Shown here piece after piece: positions 5,615 to 54,850 of a DNA stretch of 64,000 nt (its first letter is position 1; each line of letters begins with the position of its first letter). The position numbers and the translations under genes were made by a program. The notes beneath the pieces were generated by a model. It did not search any database, was not told where the DNA came from, and saw nothing but the letters and a program-made list of their open reading frames with translations. Location: sequence record NC_048668.1; one strand, given 5' to 3'.

Positions 5615-5741
5615 GTAAAAATGATCCAGCTCATTCCTCTAACCGGGAGTGGGTTGGGTTATTCCTTTTATTTTTTGACGCTATGTATCCATGGTATAGC
5701 GATTATGCTAGTTTAACTATTGAAAACAAGGGAAGAGAAAC

Positions 5742-23985: not shown

Positions 23986-25263
23986 TTGGGTGTTTATCTG
24001 TTAAATCCGGACTATGACAGGGATATCGCAGCTCTGCCTCGTCCTCCAATTATCCTCAATGATATCGACCCGGCGCATTATGAAGGTACTGATCCAGTCA
24101 AAGAACTGACCATGACCGAATATAGCGACGACTTCATTGAGACATTACCGGCGTGTGAGTGTGGCCACACCCATGGTCGGTATAATTCATCGAACGACCC
24201 AAGTATCCCTAACACGGTATGTCCGAAATGTCAGACTGAAGTGATGAGCCCAATCGATCGAGGGTTTAAATCTTCTGTGTGGCTGAGAGCACCTAACGGT
24301 GTTCGTGCGTTCATCCGTATCAATGCGTTGGTCATGTTGCTGAAGAACTTCACCCAGGAGAACTTCTCGGCAATTGAATGGCTCTGTAACACCAAATATA
24401 AGCCAACCAACGATACCAGTGCCACGTTCCGTCGGTTCAAAGAACTGAACATCCCTCGTGGCTATAATCACTTTATCGAGAACTTCGATGACATCCTGGG
24501 AGCGATGGTGGATAGTAAGATATTCAAGCCATCTGCTAACCGTAACGATGCGTTGGTGTATTTCGATAAGTTCAGGGATCTCCTGTTCCCAACTGTCCTC
24601 CCACTACCATCTCGCCGGTCTATCATCACGGAGCTTAGTAACAAAACTCGGTTCTGTGCTGAAGGCTATGCAGATGTCGTCGATGCTGCACGAGCTATTT
24701 ACAGCTTGGTCGGTAAAGATGAACCGCGTTATCAAGTGACTAAGGAATATCACGTATTCCGAGCACTGATGATGTTGGTGAAGTATCGGGAATATATCGA
24801 CAAGAACATCCTGGGTAAGAAAGAAGGCTGGTTCCGTAAACAGATCTATGGATCTCGTACCGGGCCAACTTATCGTGGCGTAGTAACGTCTATCGCGGGA
24901 TCTCACGACTATGAAGAAATGCATATGCCGTGGGGGATTGCGTTAGGGGTTTATCACACCCACTTGATCGGAAAGTTAGTTCGTCGCGGATTCACCATCC
25001 AAGACTCTGAGGATCTACTGATCTCTTCAGTAGGGCGTTATAATCCACTGATCTCCACACTGCTGGATGAGCTGATTGACGAATCTCCGTTTACGACAAT
25101 TAGTGGTAAACGTGGACTGCCTCAGTTGCTGGGTCGAAATCCAACGTTGAACTTACGTTCGATTCAGAACCTGTTTGTCACCAAAATCAAAAGGGACGTG
25201 CACGACAATACTATCGGCCTATCGCTGCTAGTGCTGAAGGCTCCGAACTGTGACTTCGACGGT
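23986..25263 (+). CDS. non-virion RNAP beta' N-terminal subunit (phiKZ gp55-like), exon 1
   Basis: Zn finger CECG...CPKC, RNPTL, ends NCDFDG at the 5' splice site. Confidence 0.88.
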
Positions 25264-25559
25264 AGAAGTAACCCAACTAAGTTGCCGTCTTAAAACTCCT
25301 TTAACTGCTGGGAACTCTTGCTAGGTAGATTGGCTACAACGTAACTGGAAACGGTAAGCGTGAATGCTTGAAAACAATCTAATAGAGACAATCAGCATCC
25401 AAGCTCCTGTAAAATGGAGAAGGTTCAACGACTATCGAAAGCACGTAACACGGATGTGGTAAACGTAGTGAGTAGAGTAGGGGAAACCCGAAACGGGGAG
25501 CACTTGAACGATTCAAGTGAAGATATAGTCTGTTAAGTACTCGGTGCATTTAGCCGAGG
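25264..25559 (+). mobile_element. group I intron without ORF (296 nt)
   Basis: P1 GACGGT/GCCGTC with U-G at splice site; P AACTGCTGGGAA, Q AATCAGCATCC, R GTTCAACGACTA, S AAGATATAGTC; ends in G; splicing restores DFDGD. Confidence 0.9.
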
Positions 25560-25733: not shown

Positions 25734-26354
25734 TTGAAAATTTCTATAGTTAGCGGAGACGAGCGATCGTTCCGAGCGGCTGCGTTCGGGATGCCTGATC
25801 GTGACTCCGTAGAGCGGACATATTCTCGTCTGGAAGAATTCAGTCGTGGGTTGTCTTCTCGGGCAAGGGAAGGTCTGGAGCGTACTCGTGGGTTGATTGA
25901 ATCCATGTATGACGATACGGTGCGTAACTCGCTGCGTATTCTGGGCCGGGTTAAACGCGGGCTGTTCCGTGATGACGTTATCCAGTTCTTGGATGATCAG
26001 ACAGAAATTGCCACAGCACCGATGACCATGCGTCGTTGGATTCTGGCGCACCCATTCATCCGTAGTCGTTATGATACCCAGTCCATTGATGCTTGGGGTA
26101 GTAAACCCGGTCAGTGGGATCTGGAAGGTAAAGGCTATGAAGATCTCTTCTATCGTGCAGCGACCAATGGTCTGGCAACGAAGAACGAGAAAGGTGAATG
26201 GTGGAGCGAATATACGTTTGGCGGTTGTTCTGTTCCTGGTGCGGGTACTATCTCTCTGGAAGAGCAGATGGATATCCTGGCTACCTGGGATATTATTGAC
26301 GACTGCATCGCAGACGGAATCGATCCGACTTCAGTAATGAAAGAGCGTCTTTAA
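25734..26354 (+). CDS. conserved core hypothetical protein
   Basis: SD AGGAGG, TTG start, terminator at 26361-26394. Confidence 0.7.
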   Translation: MKISIVSGDERSFRAAAFGMPDRDSVERTYSRLEEFSRGLSSRAREGLERTRGLIESMYDDTVRNSLRILGRVKRGLFRDDVIQFLDDQTEIATAPMTMRRWILAHPFIRSRYDTQSIDAWGSKPGQWDLEGKGYEDLFYRAATNGLATKNEKGEWWSEYTFGGCSVPGAGTISLEEQMDILATWDIIDDCIADGIDPTSVMKERL

Positions 26355-52774: not shown

Positions 52775-52934
52775 ATGCCTAGTACCAGTAAGAAACAAGA
52801 GCAATTCATGGCAGTCGCTGCCCACGACAAAGAGTTCGCTGAAGAAGCAGGCATTCCCCAGAAGGTTGCTAAAGAATTCCATAACGCCGGATAAGCGTAA
52901 GAAGAACAAGAAAGCGATCTTGGCAAAACGTTGA
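52775..52934 (+). CDS. small protein MPSTSKKQ...; +1 frameshift near 52888
   Basis: SD GAGGA; MPSTSKKQEQFMAVAAHDKEFAEEAGIPQKVAKEF. Confidence 0.65.
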
Positions 52935-53072
52935 TTTAGATCTTTTTTTACGCAACAAGTTTAAGTATGTAGAAGCTGCATCAAGTAATCATTTAGTTCA
53001 ATTAACTCCAGGGTCGATTGTCGGTAACTAAGTGAGATTCAGCTACAAGCGGGGATGGATCCCCACTAAGTA

Positions 53073-53234
53073 TTGGAGAGCTTTAAGGGTACGATCTCAA
53101 TCGTCCGGGTTGTGGAACAACTTCCGCACACTAGTGCGTTGGTTTAGGGTTCGACTCCCTACCGGAATGCCTTAAAGGTAGCGCATGATAAATGCGAGCA
53201 ACTAACACGAGGCGACATTACGCGCCTACTCCAA
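53073..53234 (+). ncRNA. multi-stem RNA with nested tRNA-like domain
   Basis: TTGGAG/CTCCAA, CTTTAAGG/CCTTAAAG, TCCGG/CCGGA, T arm TAGGG-TTCGACT-CCCTA. Confidence 0.5.
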
Positions 53235-53249
53235 TCAAGACGAATTCCT

Positions 53250-53334
53250 GGTAGGTTACTCAAGCGGCAACGAGAACAGACTGTAAATCTGTTGCCTTCG
53301 GGCTTCGATGGTTCGAGTCCATCACCTACCACCA
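53250..53334 (+). tRNA. trnY: tRNA-Tyr(GTA)
   Basis: acceptor GGTAGGT/ACCTACC, anticodon arm ACAGA-CTGTAAA-TCTGT, long variable arm, TTCGAGT T loop, encoded ACCA. Confidence 0.95.
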
Positions 53335-53341
53335 AAACAAT

Positions 53342-53420
53342 GAACCGAGTAGCTCAACTGAATAGAGCACCGTCCCGCTAAGACGGAGGTTAGAGGTTTA
53401 AGTCCTTTCTCTGGTTCCCA
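53342..53420 (+). tRNA. atypical/pseudo tRNA: Arg-like body, GCT anticodon
   Basis: D arm AGCTCAACTGAATAGAGC, arm CCGTC-CCGCTAA-GACGG, T loop TTTAAGT, bulged acceptor, CCA. Confidence 0.65.
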
Positions 53421-53426
53421 AACAAC

Positions 53427-53590
53427 GACACTGATCTCAAGAAGATCGGCAGCCTTACCCAACCGTGTCGCGGCGATCGCCAGCAATCGGTATTTAGTGC
53501 ACGGTACGTAGACAAGCCTTTGAGCGAAGTTCCGCGTCCCGAGCCGTCGGCAGCCCATAAGCCTCAGTGAAATTCTGAGGGGTGTCACCA
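53427..53590 (+). ncRNA. tRNA-mimic RNA (164 nt) ending ACCA
   Basis: GACACT/GGTGTC stacked on CCTCAG-TGAAATT-CTGAGG. Confidence 0.6.
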
Positions 53591-53680
53591 AAGATGTCCT
53601 CATTGCAGAGGGAGGTTGATTGTAGTCAGCCTGTTGTGAAACGAATCTGCAGTGGGGACGCCTTCCCTTTCTAAAGTTTT

Positions 53681-53769
53681 ATCGAGATAGTCTACTTAAA
53701 CCTAGTGAGGAATTCGACGGCGGATACGTCCGTAAGACTGCGTAGGTTCGATCCCTACTCTCGATCCGA
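53681..53769 (+). ncRNA. tRNA-mimic RNA, three-way type
   Basis: ATCGAGA/TCTCGAT, AGTCT/AGACT, GTAGG-TTCGATC-CCTAC. Confidence 0.55.
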
Positions 53770-53782
53770 TTTAAAAGAACAA

Positions 53783-53909
53783 TGACGCCTGCACGTAAAA
53801 AGCAAACTGCGCCAGCTGGGCGCGGTGGGGGCTAAGTGCCATGAACCATGCGGCGAGATCGCGGCGAAGGTATAAGATAGCCAGGTGCGATTCCTGGGGG
53901 CGTCACCCA
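53783..53909 (+). ncRNA. tRNA-mimic RNA (127 nt) ending CCCA
   Basis: TGACGCCT/GGGCGTCA, CCAGG-TGCGATT-CCTGG. Confidence 0.6.
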
Positions 53910-53911
53910 AT

Positions 53912-53988
53912 TAGGTACGTAAGTCTCAAGTGGCCGCATTCATCTGCCCGCTGCCTAAAGACTTTGTGGAATGGATTCCGCGTACCTA
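53912..53988 (+). ncRNA. tRNA-mimic RNA, three-way type
   Basis: TAGGTAC/GTACCTA, AAGTCT/AGACTT, GTGGA-ATGGAT-TCCGC. Confidence 0.5.
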
Positions 53989-54024
53989 AAAACCAGTAAG
54001 TTAAACTAATAGGACGATTCTACG

Positions 54025-54535
54025 ATGACTATCCTTAATCGCGATATGATCATGCAAGAACTCTTAAACTCAATAGATCCTGATGCAGGCCCATGTCTTG
54101 GGCTTAGCAGGGAAAAAGAGTTAGCCGAAATTTATACGCTAGGATTCAAGGCACCTCGCCAAACGGGGTCTACGTATTGGCTTATCGAAAAACTCATTGA
54201 GGATCGTAACTCAATTGTAATTTTGATTAATAGCGACTTTAAAGAACACTTCCTAGGCGGATGTTGAGAAATACCCTAAAGTCATTTTCGACAAATGTGT
54301 TCAATATGGACCATCTGTTGAACGAGGTATTCTTAATGGCGATAAAGACAATATAGTCGATCGCTGTTTCACTGCCAGGGAATTCCTAAACGCCGACCTA
54401 GAACGTCACCGCTACGCCACATCGGTCTTCTTTGATGGCGCGTCGACGATTGCTAGTAAGATTAATCTTAATGCGTATTACCGAAAGTTGGCCAAAGAAG
54501 TAAAAGGTTATCCGGTTACTTGGCTGATTAACTAA
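54025..54535 (+). CDS. hypothetical protein with degenerate P-loop; +1 frameshift near 54257
   Basis: APRQTGST; frames join (LADVEKYPK) after removing one G. Confidence 0.55.
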
Positions 54536-54627
54536 AGAACACTTGATGTGCTGGTAAAGGTTTAGTCGCCTTTTTTAAGATCGTCCGCTAACGATTGATA
54601 CTAGCGCATCTTTTTTATTGAAGAATC

Positions 54628-54850
54628 CCGCCGATCGGGTAGCGTACGTCTGGCGTAGTCATTACTCTAATTGAGTGGGGATACGAGGGGTTTACCAGTC
54701 GATCGGTGGTACCAAACTCCGAGCAGGTTGCAGCCGGCTGGAGTAAATAGGGGACTGCGAGTCCCCAGGTGCATAAAGGCCCAGAAATGGCGCCCGGCAC
54801 AAGACGCAGCGCGTCGGTATCGAGAGGGGCTTCGGCCCCTCTCTTTATTT
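54628..54850 (+). ncRNA. candidate GC-rich structured RNA with UUCG terminator
   Basis: CCGCCGATCG/CGATCGGTGG, GGGGAC-TGCGA-GTCCCC, GAGAGGGGC-TTCG-GCCCCTCTC. Confidence 0.5.

What the first reader, a model, noticed from the sequence alone, without database searches (positions are those of the whole stretch)
52944..53990. tRNA island dominated by tRNA-mimic RNAs rather than tRNAs
Seen: after a TTTTTTACG...GTATGTAGAA promoter-like motif there is about 1 kb without a credible ORF. It holds one canonical tRNA (Tyr), one aberrant tRNA, and at least five tandem elements that keep an acceptor-like stem stacked on a T-arm-like hairpin (about 12-bp minihelix, some with encoded CCA) but have unrelated interiors. 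Established: acceptor plus T arm is what RNase P, RNase Z and the CCA-adding enzyme recognise, and T4 encodes stable non-tRNA species (RNA C and D) of unknown function in its tRNA cluster. Inference: the phage may use tRNA-like ends to cut a polycistron into a set of stable ncRNAs. These could act as decoys for anticodon nucleases or tRNA sensors, or as scaffolds. This is the best candidate here for an undescribed RNA system.
Basis: partly seen in the sequence, partly recalled or inferred. Interest (0 to 1): 0.8.

Follow-up and report, generated by a model that had tools for sequence, protein, structure and literature searches.

The report
Phage tRNA array filled with tRNA-shaped RNAs
A 1-kb gene-free stretch of a Serratia jumbo phage carries one normal tRNA, one odd tRNA and six conserved folded RNAs, five with tRNA-like ends; two belong to phage-wide RNA families absent from Rfam, and their function is unknown.

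Summary
The window is the end of Serratia phage 2050HW (Moabitevirus). Positions 52944-53995 have no supported ORF. ARAGORN calls only tRNA-Tyr; Rfam adds one aberrant tRNA with a GCU anticodon.

The rest is a head-to-tail series of structured RNAs. Five end in a closing helix stacked on a 3'-proximal hairpin, six times more often than shuffles ever gave.

They are not decayed pseudogenes. Against phage Totoro the flanking genes are about 75% identical, while three of these RNAs are 100% identical. The tRNA-Tyr slot itself is replaced, deleted or interrupted in relatives.

Two elements belong to wider families that have no Rfam model:
- Family A (53072-53235) is a 120-257 nt cloverleaf-topology RNA with a nested tRNA-like arm and a near-invariant 3' module. 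It occurs in 37 IMG/VR contigs but only 4 of 185,579 bacterial species genomes, mostly slotted into tRNA arrays. P1-P3 covary strongly.
- Family B (53681-53765) is about 86 nt, 82-86% identical from jumbo phages to T4-like Klebsiella phages, with compensatory changes in four of its five helices.

The closest precedent is T4 rnaC/rnaD, whose function is also unknown; there is no sequence homology. Maturation by tRNA-processing enzymes is plausible but untested. The decoy idea is speculation.

The parts
52944..52974 (+). Promoter-like motif: a T-run, then ACG, a spacer, and GTATGTAGAA.
   Evidence: The exact motif is unique in the window. A looser form, T-run plus TATGTA, recurs at 5682, 13555, 21814 and 52748. 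No sigma-70-like site lies on the + strand here. The phage encodes its own multisubunit RNA polymerases, as annotated in Moabite. Function was not tested.
52975..53071 (+). 5' leader containing an invariant hairpin, GGGGA-UGGA-UCCCC, at 53051-53064.
   Evidence: It is less conserved than the downstream RNAs: 89% identity to Totoro. Its supposed 3' closing strand is P1 of family A.
53072..53235 (+). Family A RNA, about 164 nt, with cloverleaf topology.
- P1: 53072-78 pairs with 53229-35.
- Junction AG.
- P2: 53081-88 pairs with 53170-77 and encloses a nested tRNA-like arm (stem 53104-08/53162-66, T arm 53145-61).
- GUAGC, then the P3 hairpin, then GAGCAACUAACACG.
- P4: 53210-14 pairs with 53223-27.
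   Evidence: - Distribution: blastn matched 65 phage records. An exact pattern scan found 37 IMG/VR loci and 4 of 185,579 species genomes.
- Architecture: 32 of 36 non-redundant instances have the full layout.
- Structure: RNAalifold recovers P1-P4, with 12 of 22 pairs carrying compensatory changes. Canonical pairing is 98.9% in P1, 99.6% in P2 and 100% in P3.
- No Rfam family matches.
- It is 100% identical in Totoro, where the flanks are 75%.
53250..53334 (+). Canonical tRNA-Tyr(GUA) with a long variable arm and an encoded CCA.
   Evidence: ARAGORN and Rfam at 53.9 bits. The slot varies within the genus: a different allele in Kodama, an 8-nt deletion in Haymo, and an HNH gene insertion in Totoro.
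53343..53416 (+). Aberrant tRNA-like RNA with a GCU anticodon, annotated tRNA-Ser in relatives. It has two acceptor mismatches, C33, and no long variable arm. CCA follows in an alternative 9-bp register.
   Evidence: Rfam tRNA scores 41.4 bits. ARAGORN does not call it in this window but does call it in Moabite and Totoro. The T arm shows compensatory changes within the genus.
53427..53590 (+). E4: a 160-nt RNA closed by GACACU/GGUGUC, stacked on a CCUCAG-UGAAAUU-CUGAGG hairpin, followed by an encoded ACCA.
   Evidence: Fold. In Moabite the interior is replaced by unrelated sequence. The 3' hairpin is kept there with an A-U to C-G compensatory change, and a closing helix is retained. No homologue was found outside Moabitevirus.
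53591..53664 (+). E5: a long, imperfect hairpin of 28 predicted pairs. It is not tRNA-like.
   Evidence: Free energy -35.4 kcal/mol, z = -4.1. All 3 stem substitutions in Moabite preserve pairing. It is 100% identical in Totoro.
53681..53765 (+). E6, family B: an 85-nt tRNA-like RNA.
- A 7-bp acceptor stem.
- One 5-bp arm that replaces the D and anticodon arms. It carries a 23-nt loop that is nearly invariant and a UACG-capped hairpin.
- A canonical T arm.
   Evidence: - Identity is 82-86% to Klebsiella phage N1M2, Shewanella phage SXP01 and about 70 T4-like Klebsiella, Salmonella and Enterobacter phages.
- Covariance model R1 scores members at 58-112 bits.
- 97.4% of cells are paired, and 10 of 25 pairs changed on both sides; slid controls gave at most 1.
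- In JD18 it sits between tRNA-Leu and tRNA-Thr, and in N1M2 just before tRNA-Arg.
53783..53909 (+). E7: a 124-nt RNA closed by UGACGCCU/GGGCGUCA, stacked on a CCAGG-UGCGAUU-CCUGG hairpin, then CCCA.
   Evidence: Fold. An internal hairpin differs between genus members while mostly keeping its pairing: 4 events keep pairing and 2 break it. Restricted to the genus.
53911..53995 (+). E8: a Y-shaped RNA closed by UUAGGUAC/GUACCUAA, stacked on a 6-bp hairpin with a UGGA tetraloop, then AAACCA. It lies immediately upstream of the next ORF at 54025.
   Evidence: Fold z = -3.2. BUCT660 tolerates a 14-nt duplication in the interior. Identity is 95-100% within the genus.
54822..54843 (+). The first strong intrinsic-terminator-like hairpin downstream. 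It is a possible end of the transcription unit (inference).
   Evidence: No comparable + strand terminator lies within 53000-54800.

Best explanation
The locus is this phage's tRNA array, read from a phage promoter near 52944-52974. Only one or two of its eight or so slots hold decoding tRNAs.

The other slots hold conserved structured RNAs. Most keep the minimal feature that tRNA-maturation enzymes recognise: a terminal helix coaxial with a 3'-proximal hairpin.

The likely mechanism has three steps.
1. The polycistronic transcript is cut by host RNase P at each 5' end.
2. 3' ends are made by endonucleases or exonucleases, with CCA addition where it is not encoded.
3. This releases a set of stable small RNAs, as happens for T4 species 1 and 2.

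Shown here:
- The RNAs are real, selected structures.
- Two of them belong to phage-wide families that occupy tRNA-gene slots in arrays.

Inferred: the processing route. Its sub-confidence is about 0.55.

Speculative: the mature RNAs act in trans as tRNA-shaped ligands for a host or phage tRNA-binding factor. The near-invariant unpaired segments would suit this role. These are the 23-nt loop of family B and the GAGCAACUAACACG-P4 module of family A. Sub-confidence for this reading is about 0.2-0.3.
For: - Real and non-random: minihelix motifs occur 6 times, against a shuffle mean of 0.12.
- Selected: Totoro's flanks are about 75% identical, while family A, E5 and E6 are 100%, E8 is 95% and E7 is 87%. 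Substitutions in E5 and E6 all preserve pairing.
- Family A: 37 viral loci against 4 bacterial genomes. Covariation supports P1-P3.
- Family B: conserved from jumbo phages to T4-like phages, with 10 compensatory pairs.
- Slot behaviour: in 19 of 28 loci family A lies in or next to co-directional tRNA arrays. Where it abuts a tRNA, for example in L030, L037, L040, L049, L055 and L057, the spacer is 2-9 nt. Family B lies 8 nt after tRNA-Leu and 2 nt before tRNA-Thr in JD18.
- Modularity: in Moabite the E4 interior is swapped while its minihelix is kept.
- Precedent: T4 rnaC and rnaD sit in the T4 tRNA cluster. rnaC has a canonical T arm followed by a strand that can pair with its 5' end.
- tRNA-like ncRNAs can be RNase P and CCA substrates, as shown for M. 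smegmatis YrlA (PMC4201824).
Against: - No transcript, end-mapping or cleavage data exist for any of these RNAs.
- Only E4 encodes an exact ACCA directly after its helix.
- E5 has no tRNA-like feature.
- E8 and the outer P1/P4 stack of family A lack a T-loop. P1/P4 is also interrupted by one unpaired A.
- In family A the inner acceptor-like stem is continued by P2, which should hinder RNase P there.
- Moabite carries a 12-nt deletion that removes half of the inner T arm of family A. Either that arm is dispensable or that copy is defective.
- No partner protein co-occurs consistently.
- Family B covariation rests on only about three independent lineages.
- The 5' anchor of family A was first located using pairing. 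RNAalifold then recovered the same helices, but on that anchored alignment.
- The 100% identities could partly reflect recent recombination.
Confidence: 0.6

Rival explanations
1. The elements are decaying tRNA pseudogenes. They would be left over from a larger ancestral tRNA array like the 10-11-tRNA arrays of related Erwinia Machinavirus phages.
For: The syntenic region of ChrisDB and pEa_SNUABM_4 holds 10-11 real tRNAs. In some members the inner arm of family A is called a tRNA: tRNA-Val in L033, and 'tRNA-OTHER', 'Undet' or 'Gln' in GenBank records. Moabite has a deletion in one T arm.
Against: - These elements are more conserved than the neighbouring protein genes: 100% against 75%.
- Compensatory changes maintain the helices.
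- The same non-tRNA elements sit between intact tRNAs in the Machinavirus, Kolesnikvirus, N1M2 and T4-like arrays.
- The non-tRNA modules are the most conserved parts.
Confidence: 0.04
2. The elements work only in cis. They would serve as processing punctuation and stability elements that set the level of tRNA-Tyr and the 5' end of the downstream mRNA. The excised pieces would have no function of their own.
For: The tRNA-like ends are what punctuation needs. E8 abuts the next ORF. Several family A copies lie 14-60 nt upstream of ORFs in loci without tRNAs.
Against: - Punctuation does not need 23-nt and 30-nt invariant unpaired modules, nor 82-86% identity across unrelated phage families.
- The island stays conserved in Totoro, where tRNA-Tyr is destroyed.
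Confidence: 0.15
3. Family A, and possibly others, are catalytic RNAs, for example self-cleaving ribozymes that help resolve tRNA-array transcripts.
For: Family A is a four-way junction with near-invariant joining strands, and it is phage-specific. From memory, several small ribozyme classes were found in phage-like contexts.
Against: It matches no known ribozyme model in Rfam. No cleavage site can be inferred. The invariance of part of the module was imposed by the search pattern.
Confidence: 0.07
4. The region encodes small proteins, as annotated in Moabite (CPT_Moabite_075, 078, 079 and 080).
For: Short ORFs exist and were annotated with ribosome-binding sites in Moabite.
Against: - There are no Pfam hits. 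The only PHROG hit is antisense to a tRNA-like gene.
- The ORFs are not conserved across the genus, because indels and replaced segments break them.
- The conservation pattern follows RNA helices.
Confidence: 0.03

Closest known systems
Phage T4 species 1 and species 2 RNAs (rnaC, rnaD)
   Same: They are small non-tRNA RNAs encoded co-directionally inside a phage tRNA cluster. rnaC ends in a canonical T arm followed by a strand that can pair with its 5' end. Their function is unknown after 50 years (PMC3014915, PMC12685909).
   Different: No sequence similarity exists beyond the T-loop (blastn and nhmmer). Model R1 does not hit rnaC or rnaD. Here six such RNAs outnumber the tRNAs, and two of them are far more widely distributed than the T4 genes.
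Bacterial and phage Y RNA-like YrlA (Rfam RF02553)
   Same: It is a non-coding RNA with a tRNA-like domain enclosed by a terminal stem. It is modified by tRNA enzymes, and in M. smegmatis it is cut by RNase P and receives CCA (PMC4201824).
   Different: The best RF02553 score is 24.8 bits against a threshold of 69, and that match merely spans the two tRNAs. YrlA is encoded next to a Ro60 gene; family A has no consistent neighbouring gene. The domain order also differs.
mascRNA / MALAT1 tRNA-like element (RF01684)
   Same: It has a tRNA-like fold without an anticodon loop. It is used as an RNase P/Z cleavage signal, and the product receives CCA (established knowledge, from memory). It is the best sub-threshold Rfam match to the inner arm of family A.
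   Different: It scores 30.1 bits against a threshold of 42.5. It is a eukaryotic family, so the resemblance is in shape only.
GOLLD and ROOL large RNAs
   Same: [quoted passage not shown]
   Different: They are much larger (several hundred nt, from memory) and have Rfam models, none of which hits here. They are not tRNA-shaped.
Phage tRNAs used against tRNA-cleaving defences (T5 tRNA-Tyr against Retron-Eco7 PtuAB; T5 tRNA-Lys against PARIS)
   Same: This is a plausible role for the one canonical gene here, tRNA-Tyr. PtuAB depletes host tRNA-Tyr, and phage tRNA-Tyr restores infection (PMC11555353).
   Different: That mechanism needs a decoding tRNA. It does not explain the non-decoding RNAs. 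tRNA-Tyr is also the least conserved slot in this genus.
Viral candidate structured RNAs catalogue (Fremin et al. 2023)
   Same: It lists 10,006 candidates from IMG/VR and RNA-virus datasets, including tRNA-like ones (PMC10690425). It may already contain these two families as unnamed entries.
   Different: I could not check its supplementary models. No function or architecture is described there for these RNAs.

Membership tests
Canonical tRNA (Rfam RF00005 / ARAGORN) | Cloverleaf that scores above the Rfam gathering threshold (29 bits) or is called by ARAGORN, with a 7-nt anticodon loop | tested here: met
   tRNA-Tyr at 53250-53334 scores 53.9 bits and is called by ARAGORN. 53343-53416 scores 41.4 bits, but ARAGORN does not call it in this window. 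It has two acceptor mismatches and C33.
Canonical tRNA (Rfam RF00005 / ARAGORN) | The same criterion applied to family A, E4, E5, E6, E7 and E8 | tested here: not met
   No tRNA match at E <= 10 and no ARAGORN call for any of them. The anticodon arm is absent or capped by a tetraloop.
tRNA-Ser identity, for 53343-53416 | Long variable arm (class II), which bacterial SerRS requires (established knowledge) | tested here: not met
   The variable region is only about 5 nt in the Rfam alignment.
T4 rnaC / rnaD (species 1 / 2 RNA) | Sequence homology to T4 rnaC or rnaD | tested here: not met
   blastn-short matches only the 10-15-nt T-loop words. nhmmer finds nothing. R1 does not hit rnaC or rnaD.
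T4 rnaC / rnaD (species 1 / 2 RNA) | Non-tRNA RNA gene embedded co-directionally in a phage tRNA cluster | tested here: met
T4 rnaC / rnaD (species 1 / 2 RNA) | Accumulates as a discrete stable RNA during infection | not testable with these tools
   No transcriptome data were available.
YrlA / bacterial Y RNA (RF02553) | Score above the gathering threshold of 69 bits | tested here: not met
   The best scores are 24.8 and 14.7 bits.
YrlA / bacterial Y RNA (RF02553) | Encoded within about 4 kb of a Ro60 (TROVE) gene on the same strand (PMC4201824) | tested here: inconclusive
   No such gene is annotated within about 15 kb in Moabite, but most neighbours are 'hypothetical'. Neighbours of family A in 8 other loci were an HD protein, NrdD, RtcB, DUF7740 or had no hit.
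mascRNA-menRNA (RF01684) | Score above the gathering threshold of 42.5 bits | tested here: not met
   30.1 bits at 53102-53169.
tmRNA | ARAGORN or Rfam tmRNA call with a tag reading frame | tested here: not met
   None in the window.
GOLLD / ROOL | Match to the Rfam models | tested here: not met
   No match in the window or in 14 related loci.
Family A (defined here) | P1(...GAG/CUC...), AG, an 8-bp P2, GUAGC, P3, GAGCAAC-UAACACG, then P4 (AGGCG-N8-CGCCU), A, and the P1 3' strand | tested here: met
   Window 53072-53235 has every element.
Family B (defined here, model R1) | 7-bp acceptor, a 5-bp arm with a conserved loop and a UACG hairpin, and a canonical T arm; at least 58 bits with R1 | tested here: met
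   Window 53679-53768 scores 107.4 bits. It is one of the three sequences the model was built from. The independent T4-like members score 58-68 bits.

The most novel reading that the evidence does not exclude
Family A and family B would be previously undescribed, phage-specific classes of tRNA-topology RNA. Their invariant unpaired modules would bind, or act on, a conserved host tRNA-handling or defence factor, or in the case of family A be catalytic. The Moabitevirus island would then be a battery of such effector RNAs that uses the tRNA-processing pathway for its own biogenesis. It would also explain the 50-year-old puzzle of T4 RNA C and D by analogy.
Probability: 0.25. Interest if true: 0.85.

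Novelty: new variant of a known kind. Interest (0 to 1): 0.66.

Why it matters
Phage tRNA arrays are usually annotated by tRNA finders, and the gaps are ignored or filled with spurious small ORFs. Here the gaps hold the most conserved sequence in the neighbourhood.

Two of the RNAs recur across unrelated phage lineages: chimallivirus-like jumbo phages, FelixO1-like phages, T4-like phages and many uncultivated viruses. They are nearly absent from bacterial genomes and have no Rfam model. That gives concrete, testable candidates for phage effector RNAs.

It also offers a comparative handle on the unexplained T4 species 1 and 2 RNAs. On the practical side, it corrects the annotation: Moabite's ORFs 075, 078, 079 and 080 and the various 'tRNA-OTHER' calls most likely overlie these RNAs.

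Tried and rejected
- A leftmost minihelix at 53006-78: rejected, because its 3' strand is family A P1.
- Homology to T4 rnaC/rnaD: none.
- YrlA, mascRNA, tmRNA, GOLLD, ROOL or any other Rfam family: none reaches threshold in the window or in 14 related loci.
- Host origin or mimicry of an E. coli RNA: no blastn match in 5,426 complete E. coli genomes.
- A conserved partner gene next to family A: none.
- Protein-coding reading of the region: not supported.
- Literature search for the invariant family A motif as a text string: only irrelevant primer hits.
- Homologues of E4, E5, E7 and E8 outside Moabitevirus: none by blastn against 50,697 phage records. Structure-based searches of public collections were not run.
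- Family A in the fetched N1M2, SXP01, T4 and JD18 loci: absent.
- The first family B pattern scans of IMG/VR returned only 5-10 loci, four of which were coding false positives.
- I did not submit a 323-column dot-bracket string to the pair-counting tool. I counted family A pairs in a script instead and confirmed them with RNAalifold.
Full report
IDENTITY OF THE WINDOW

The region is 100% identical to Serratia phage vB_SmaM_2050HW (MF285618, 264925-266075), a 276-kb member of Moabitevirus. Relatives in the genus are BUCT660, Kodama, Haymo, Totoro, Moabite and Yaphecito, at 93-99% identity over this region. Moabite's annotation shows phiKZ-type multisubunit RNA polymerases near the locus. The Moabite genome paper reports two tRNA genes (PMC6639629).

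CHECKING THE OBSERVATION

- tRNA calls. ARAGORN finds one gene in the whole 64 kb, tRNA-Tyr(GUA) at 53250-53334. Rfam finds that tRNA and a second tRNA match at 53343-53416 (41.4 bits). The second has two acceptor mismatches, C at position 33, a GCU anticodon and only a short variable region. It therefore lacks the class II arm that bacterial SerRS needs (established knowledge).
- ORFs. Those between 52944 and 53995 are at most 93 aa and have no Pfam hit. The single weak PHROG hit lies antisense to the aberrant tRNA.
- Structured RNAs. Folding and direct reading of the sequence give a head-to-tail series, listed with coordinates under 'parts'.
- Minihelix elements. Five elements have a terminal helix whose 3' strand directly follows a hairpin. 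These are E4 (6+6 bp, then ACCA), E6 (7+5 bp, canonical UUCGAUC loop), E7 (8+5 bp), E8 (8+6 bp, tetraloop) and the inner arm of family A (5+5 bp, canonical UUCGACU loop).
- Enrichment. A permissive scan for this arrangement finds 6 hits in the 1,047-nt region. The remaining 63 kb of the + strand has 14 and the whole - strand has 6. Shuffles of the region gave a mean of 0.12 and a maximum of 2.

E5 (53591-53664) is a plain long hairpin (z = -4.1).

ARE THEY DECAYED PSEUDOGENES? NO.

A six-genome alignment and per-element counts show the opposite of decay.

- Against Totoro, the flanking protein-coding DNA is about 75% identical. Family A, E5 and E6 are 100% identical, E8 is 95%, E7 is 87% and the leader is 89%.
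- All three Moabite substitutions in E5 stems preserve pairing, and so does the single one in E6.
- In Moabite the interior of E4 is replaced by unrelated sequence. Its 3' hairpin survives with an A-U to C-G compensatory change, and a closing helix is retained.
- The canonical tRNA-Tyr slot is the unstable part. Kodama carries a different allele plus an extra tRNA-like element with a loop of about 25 nt. Haymo has an 8-nt deletion in the anticodon region. Totoro has an HNH nuclease gene inserted there.
- One counter-example exists: Moabite has a 12-nt deletion in the inner T arm of family A.

FAMILY A (53072-53235)

Blastn of the left part of the island matched 65 phage records. They include Erwinia Machinavirus jumbo phages, where the element sits between tRNA-Glu and tRNA-Asp. 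They also include FelixO1-like Kolesnikvirus phages, where some records label it 'tRNA-OTHER', 'Undet' or 'Gln', as well as Pectobacterium, Yersinia and Citrobacter phages, CBB and KEY.

An exact scan for the most conserved 27-nt pattern returned 37 IMG/VR loci on contigs of 4-381 kb. The same scan returned only 4 loci among 185,579 bacterial and archaeal species genomes. tRNAs lie next to the RNA in the two of those four that I scanned.

In 32 of 36 non-redundant instances the same architecture is present:
- P1, ending in GAG/CUC, or GUG/CAC with both sides changed.
- An invariant AG.
- An 8-bp P2 closing a variable interior of 46-104+ nt. The interior usually contains a T-loop-type hairpin and often a whole tRNA-like arm.
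- GUAGC, then a short P3 often capped by a GNRA-type loop.
- GAGCAAC-UAACACG, then P4 (AGGCG-N8-CGCCU), one A, and the P1 3' strand.

RNAalifold recovers P1-P4 on the anchored alignment, and 12 of 22 pairs show compensatory changes. Canonical pairing is 98.9% in P1, 99.6% in P2 and 100% in P3, against 17-60% when partners are slid. P4 and its flank are invariant because the search pattern required them, so they say nothing about structure.

The order is helix, 2 nt, arm, arm, long joiner, arm, helix. That is the topology of a tRNA cloverleaf, with P4 sitting where the T arm would be (inference).

In 19 of 28 loci the RNA lies within or beside a co-directional tRNA array. Where it abuts a tRNA, as in L030, L037, L040, L049, L055 and L057, the spacer is 2-9 nt, so it occupies a tRNA-gene slot. 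In one member ARAGORN calls the inner arm tRNA-Val (L033).

No neighbouring protein family recurs. No Rfam model matches the window copy at E <= 10, or twelve diverse members at gathering thresholds. There is no match in 5,426 E. coli genomes.

FAMILY B (E6, 53681-53765)

Blastn finds 86% identity in Klebsiella jumbo phage N1M2 and Shewanella phage SXP01. It finds about 82-84% identity in about 70 T4-like phages, including Jiaodavirus JD18 and KPV15 and Salmonella phage STML-198. All of these sites are unannotated.

In JD18 the element lies between tRNA-Leu and tRNA-Thr. In N1M2 it lies just upstream of tRNA-Arg.

A covariance model built from three sequences scores the independent T4-like members at 58-68 bits, while ordinary tRNAs score at most 29.

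The structure is a 7-bp acceptor, one 5-bp arm, a small 3-bp hairpin, a UACG-capped 5-bp hairpin and a canonical T arm. It is 97.4% paired, and 10 of 25 pairs changed on both sides; slid controls gave at most 1. The alignment was fitted to the model and rests on about three lineages, so this is good but not overwhelming evidence.

The 23-nt segment between the arm and the hairpin is almost invariant. There is no match in E. coli genomes or in Rfam.

OTHER ELEMENTS

E4, E5, E7 and E8 have no detectable homologues outside Moabitevirus. Weak R1 hits show further non-tRNA, tRNA-shaped fillers in gaps of the Machinavirus and N1M2 arrays. Moabite has an extra element of the same design in a 290-nt insertion after E6.

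HOW IT MOST LIKELY WORKS

Shown: these are selected RNA structures, arranged like tRNA genes in a single orientation. They lie behind a promoter-like motif, and no strong terminator follows until 54822-54843.

Inferred: the transcript is resolved by the host's tRNA-maturation enzymes, because a terminal helix stacked on a 3'-proximal hairpin is the minimal RNase P substrate. From memory, model minihelix substrates, 4.5S RNA, tmRNA and the phage P1/P7 C4 RNA are all non-tRNA RNase P substrates. YrlA of M. smegmatis is cut by RNase P and gains CCA (PMC4201824).

Speculative: the mature RNAs act in trans through their invariant unpaired modules. Decoying of anticodon nucleases is unlikely for RNAs that lack anticodon loops. 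Factors that read the acceptor end or the tRNA elbow would fit better. Nothing here tests this.

The tRNA-Tyr itself may serve as a replacement for a defence-depleted host tRNA, as shown for T5-like phages against Retron-Eco7 (PMC11555353). Its dispensability within the genus argues that it is an accessory function.

COMPARISON WITH WHAT IS KNOWN

The nearest precedent is T4 rnaC/rnaD. They share the genomic setting, rnaC shares the T-arm-plus-terminal-helix design, and their function is unknown. There is no sequence homology.

YrlA, mascRNA, tmRNA and GOLLD/ROOL all fail their membership tests, although each shares one aspect.

Fremin et al. 2023 catalogued 10,006 viral candidate structured RNAs, some of them tRNA-like. 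These two families may be among them unnamed. I could not check.

VERDICT

It is not a new kind of system, because non-tRNA RNAs in phage tRNA clusters have been known since T4. It does contribute:
- two well-supported phage-wide RNA families without Rfam models, one of them with an unusual cloverleaf-within-cloverleaf design;
- an island in which such RNAs outnumber tRNAs and are more conserved than both the tRNA and the neighbouring genes.

Function and processing remain untested.

Noticed in passing
window 25240-25549 (+): Rfam calls a group I catalytic intron (58 bits, threshold 50). It lies between ORFs 23986-25293 and 25734-26354, neither of which has a Pfam hit.
   Followed up: partly
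window 52775-52894 and 54025-54267: Both ORFs flanking the island are shorter than in relatives: 39 aa against 52 aa, and 80 aa against 169 aa. Each matches only part of its PHROG family. This suggests frameshifts or sequencing errors in the 2050HW record.
   Followed up: partly
L002 (Totoro) 1924-2529: An HNH nuclease gene is inserted in the tRNA-Tyr slot. It leaves the first 27 or so nt of a tRNA-Tyr allele and alters the 5' acceptor strand of the adjacent GCU tRNA-like gene.
   Followed up: partly
L011 (Kodama) about 733-842; L012 (Haymo) 649-728: Kodama has an extra tRNA-like element with a normal D arm and T arm but an 'anticodon loop' of about 25 nt containing a hairpin. In Haymo, the gene in the tRNA-Tyr slot has an 8-nt deletion at the anticodon and is annotated tRNA-Asn.
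   Followed up: no
L001 (Moabite) about 2400-2705 and 1748-1760: Moabite has a 290-nt insertion after E6 holding another element with a closing stem and a 3' hairpin. It also has a 12-nt deletion in the inner T arm of family A. Its annotated small ORFs 075, 078, 079 and 080 overlie these RNAs.
   Followed up: partly
L006 3592-3687; L003 3797-3893; L004 2879-2985: Other gaps in the Machinavirus and N1M2 tRNA arrays give weak hits to the tRNA-shaped model R1 but are not called as tRNAs. They may be further non-decoding fillers.
   Followed up: no
L036 4599-5816 (-): In one uncultivated viral contig, an RtcB RNA ligase gene follows family A and a tRNA-Pro. This was seen only once.
   Followed up: no
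window 5682, 13555, 21814, 52748, 52966: A T-run followed 10-17 nt later by TATGTA recurs. It is a candidate promoter motif for the phage's own RNA polymerase.
   Followed up: partly
window 53352-53429 (-): The weak phrog_4647 match lies antisense to the tRNA-like gene. That PHROG family may consist of spurious ORFs called across tRNA genes.
   Followed up: no
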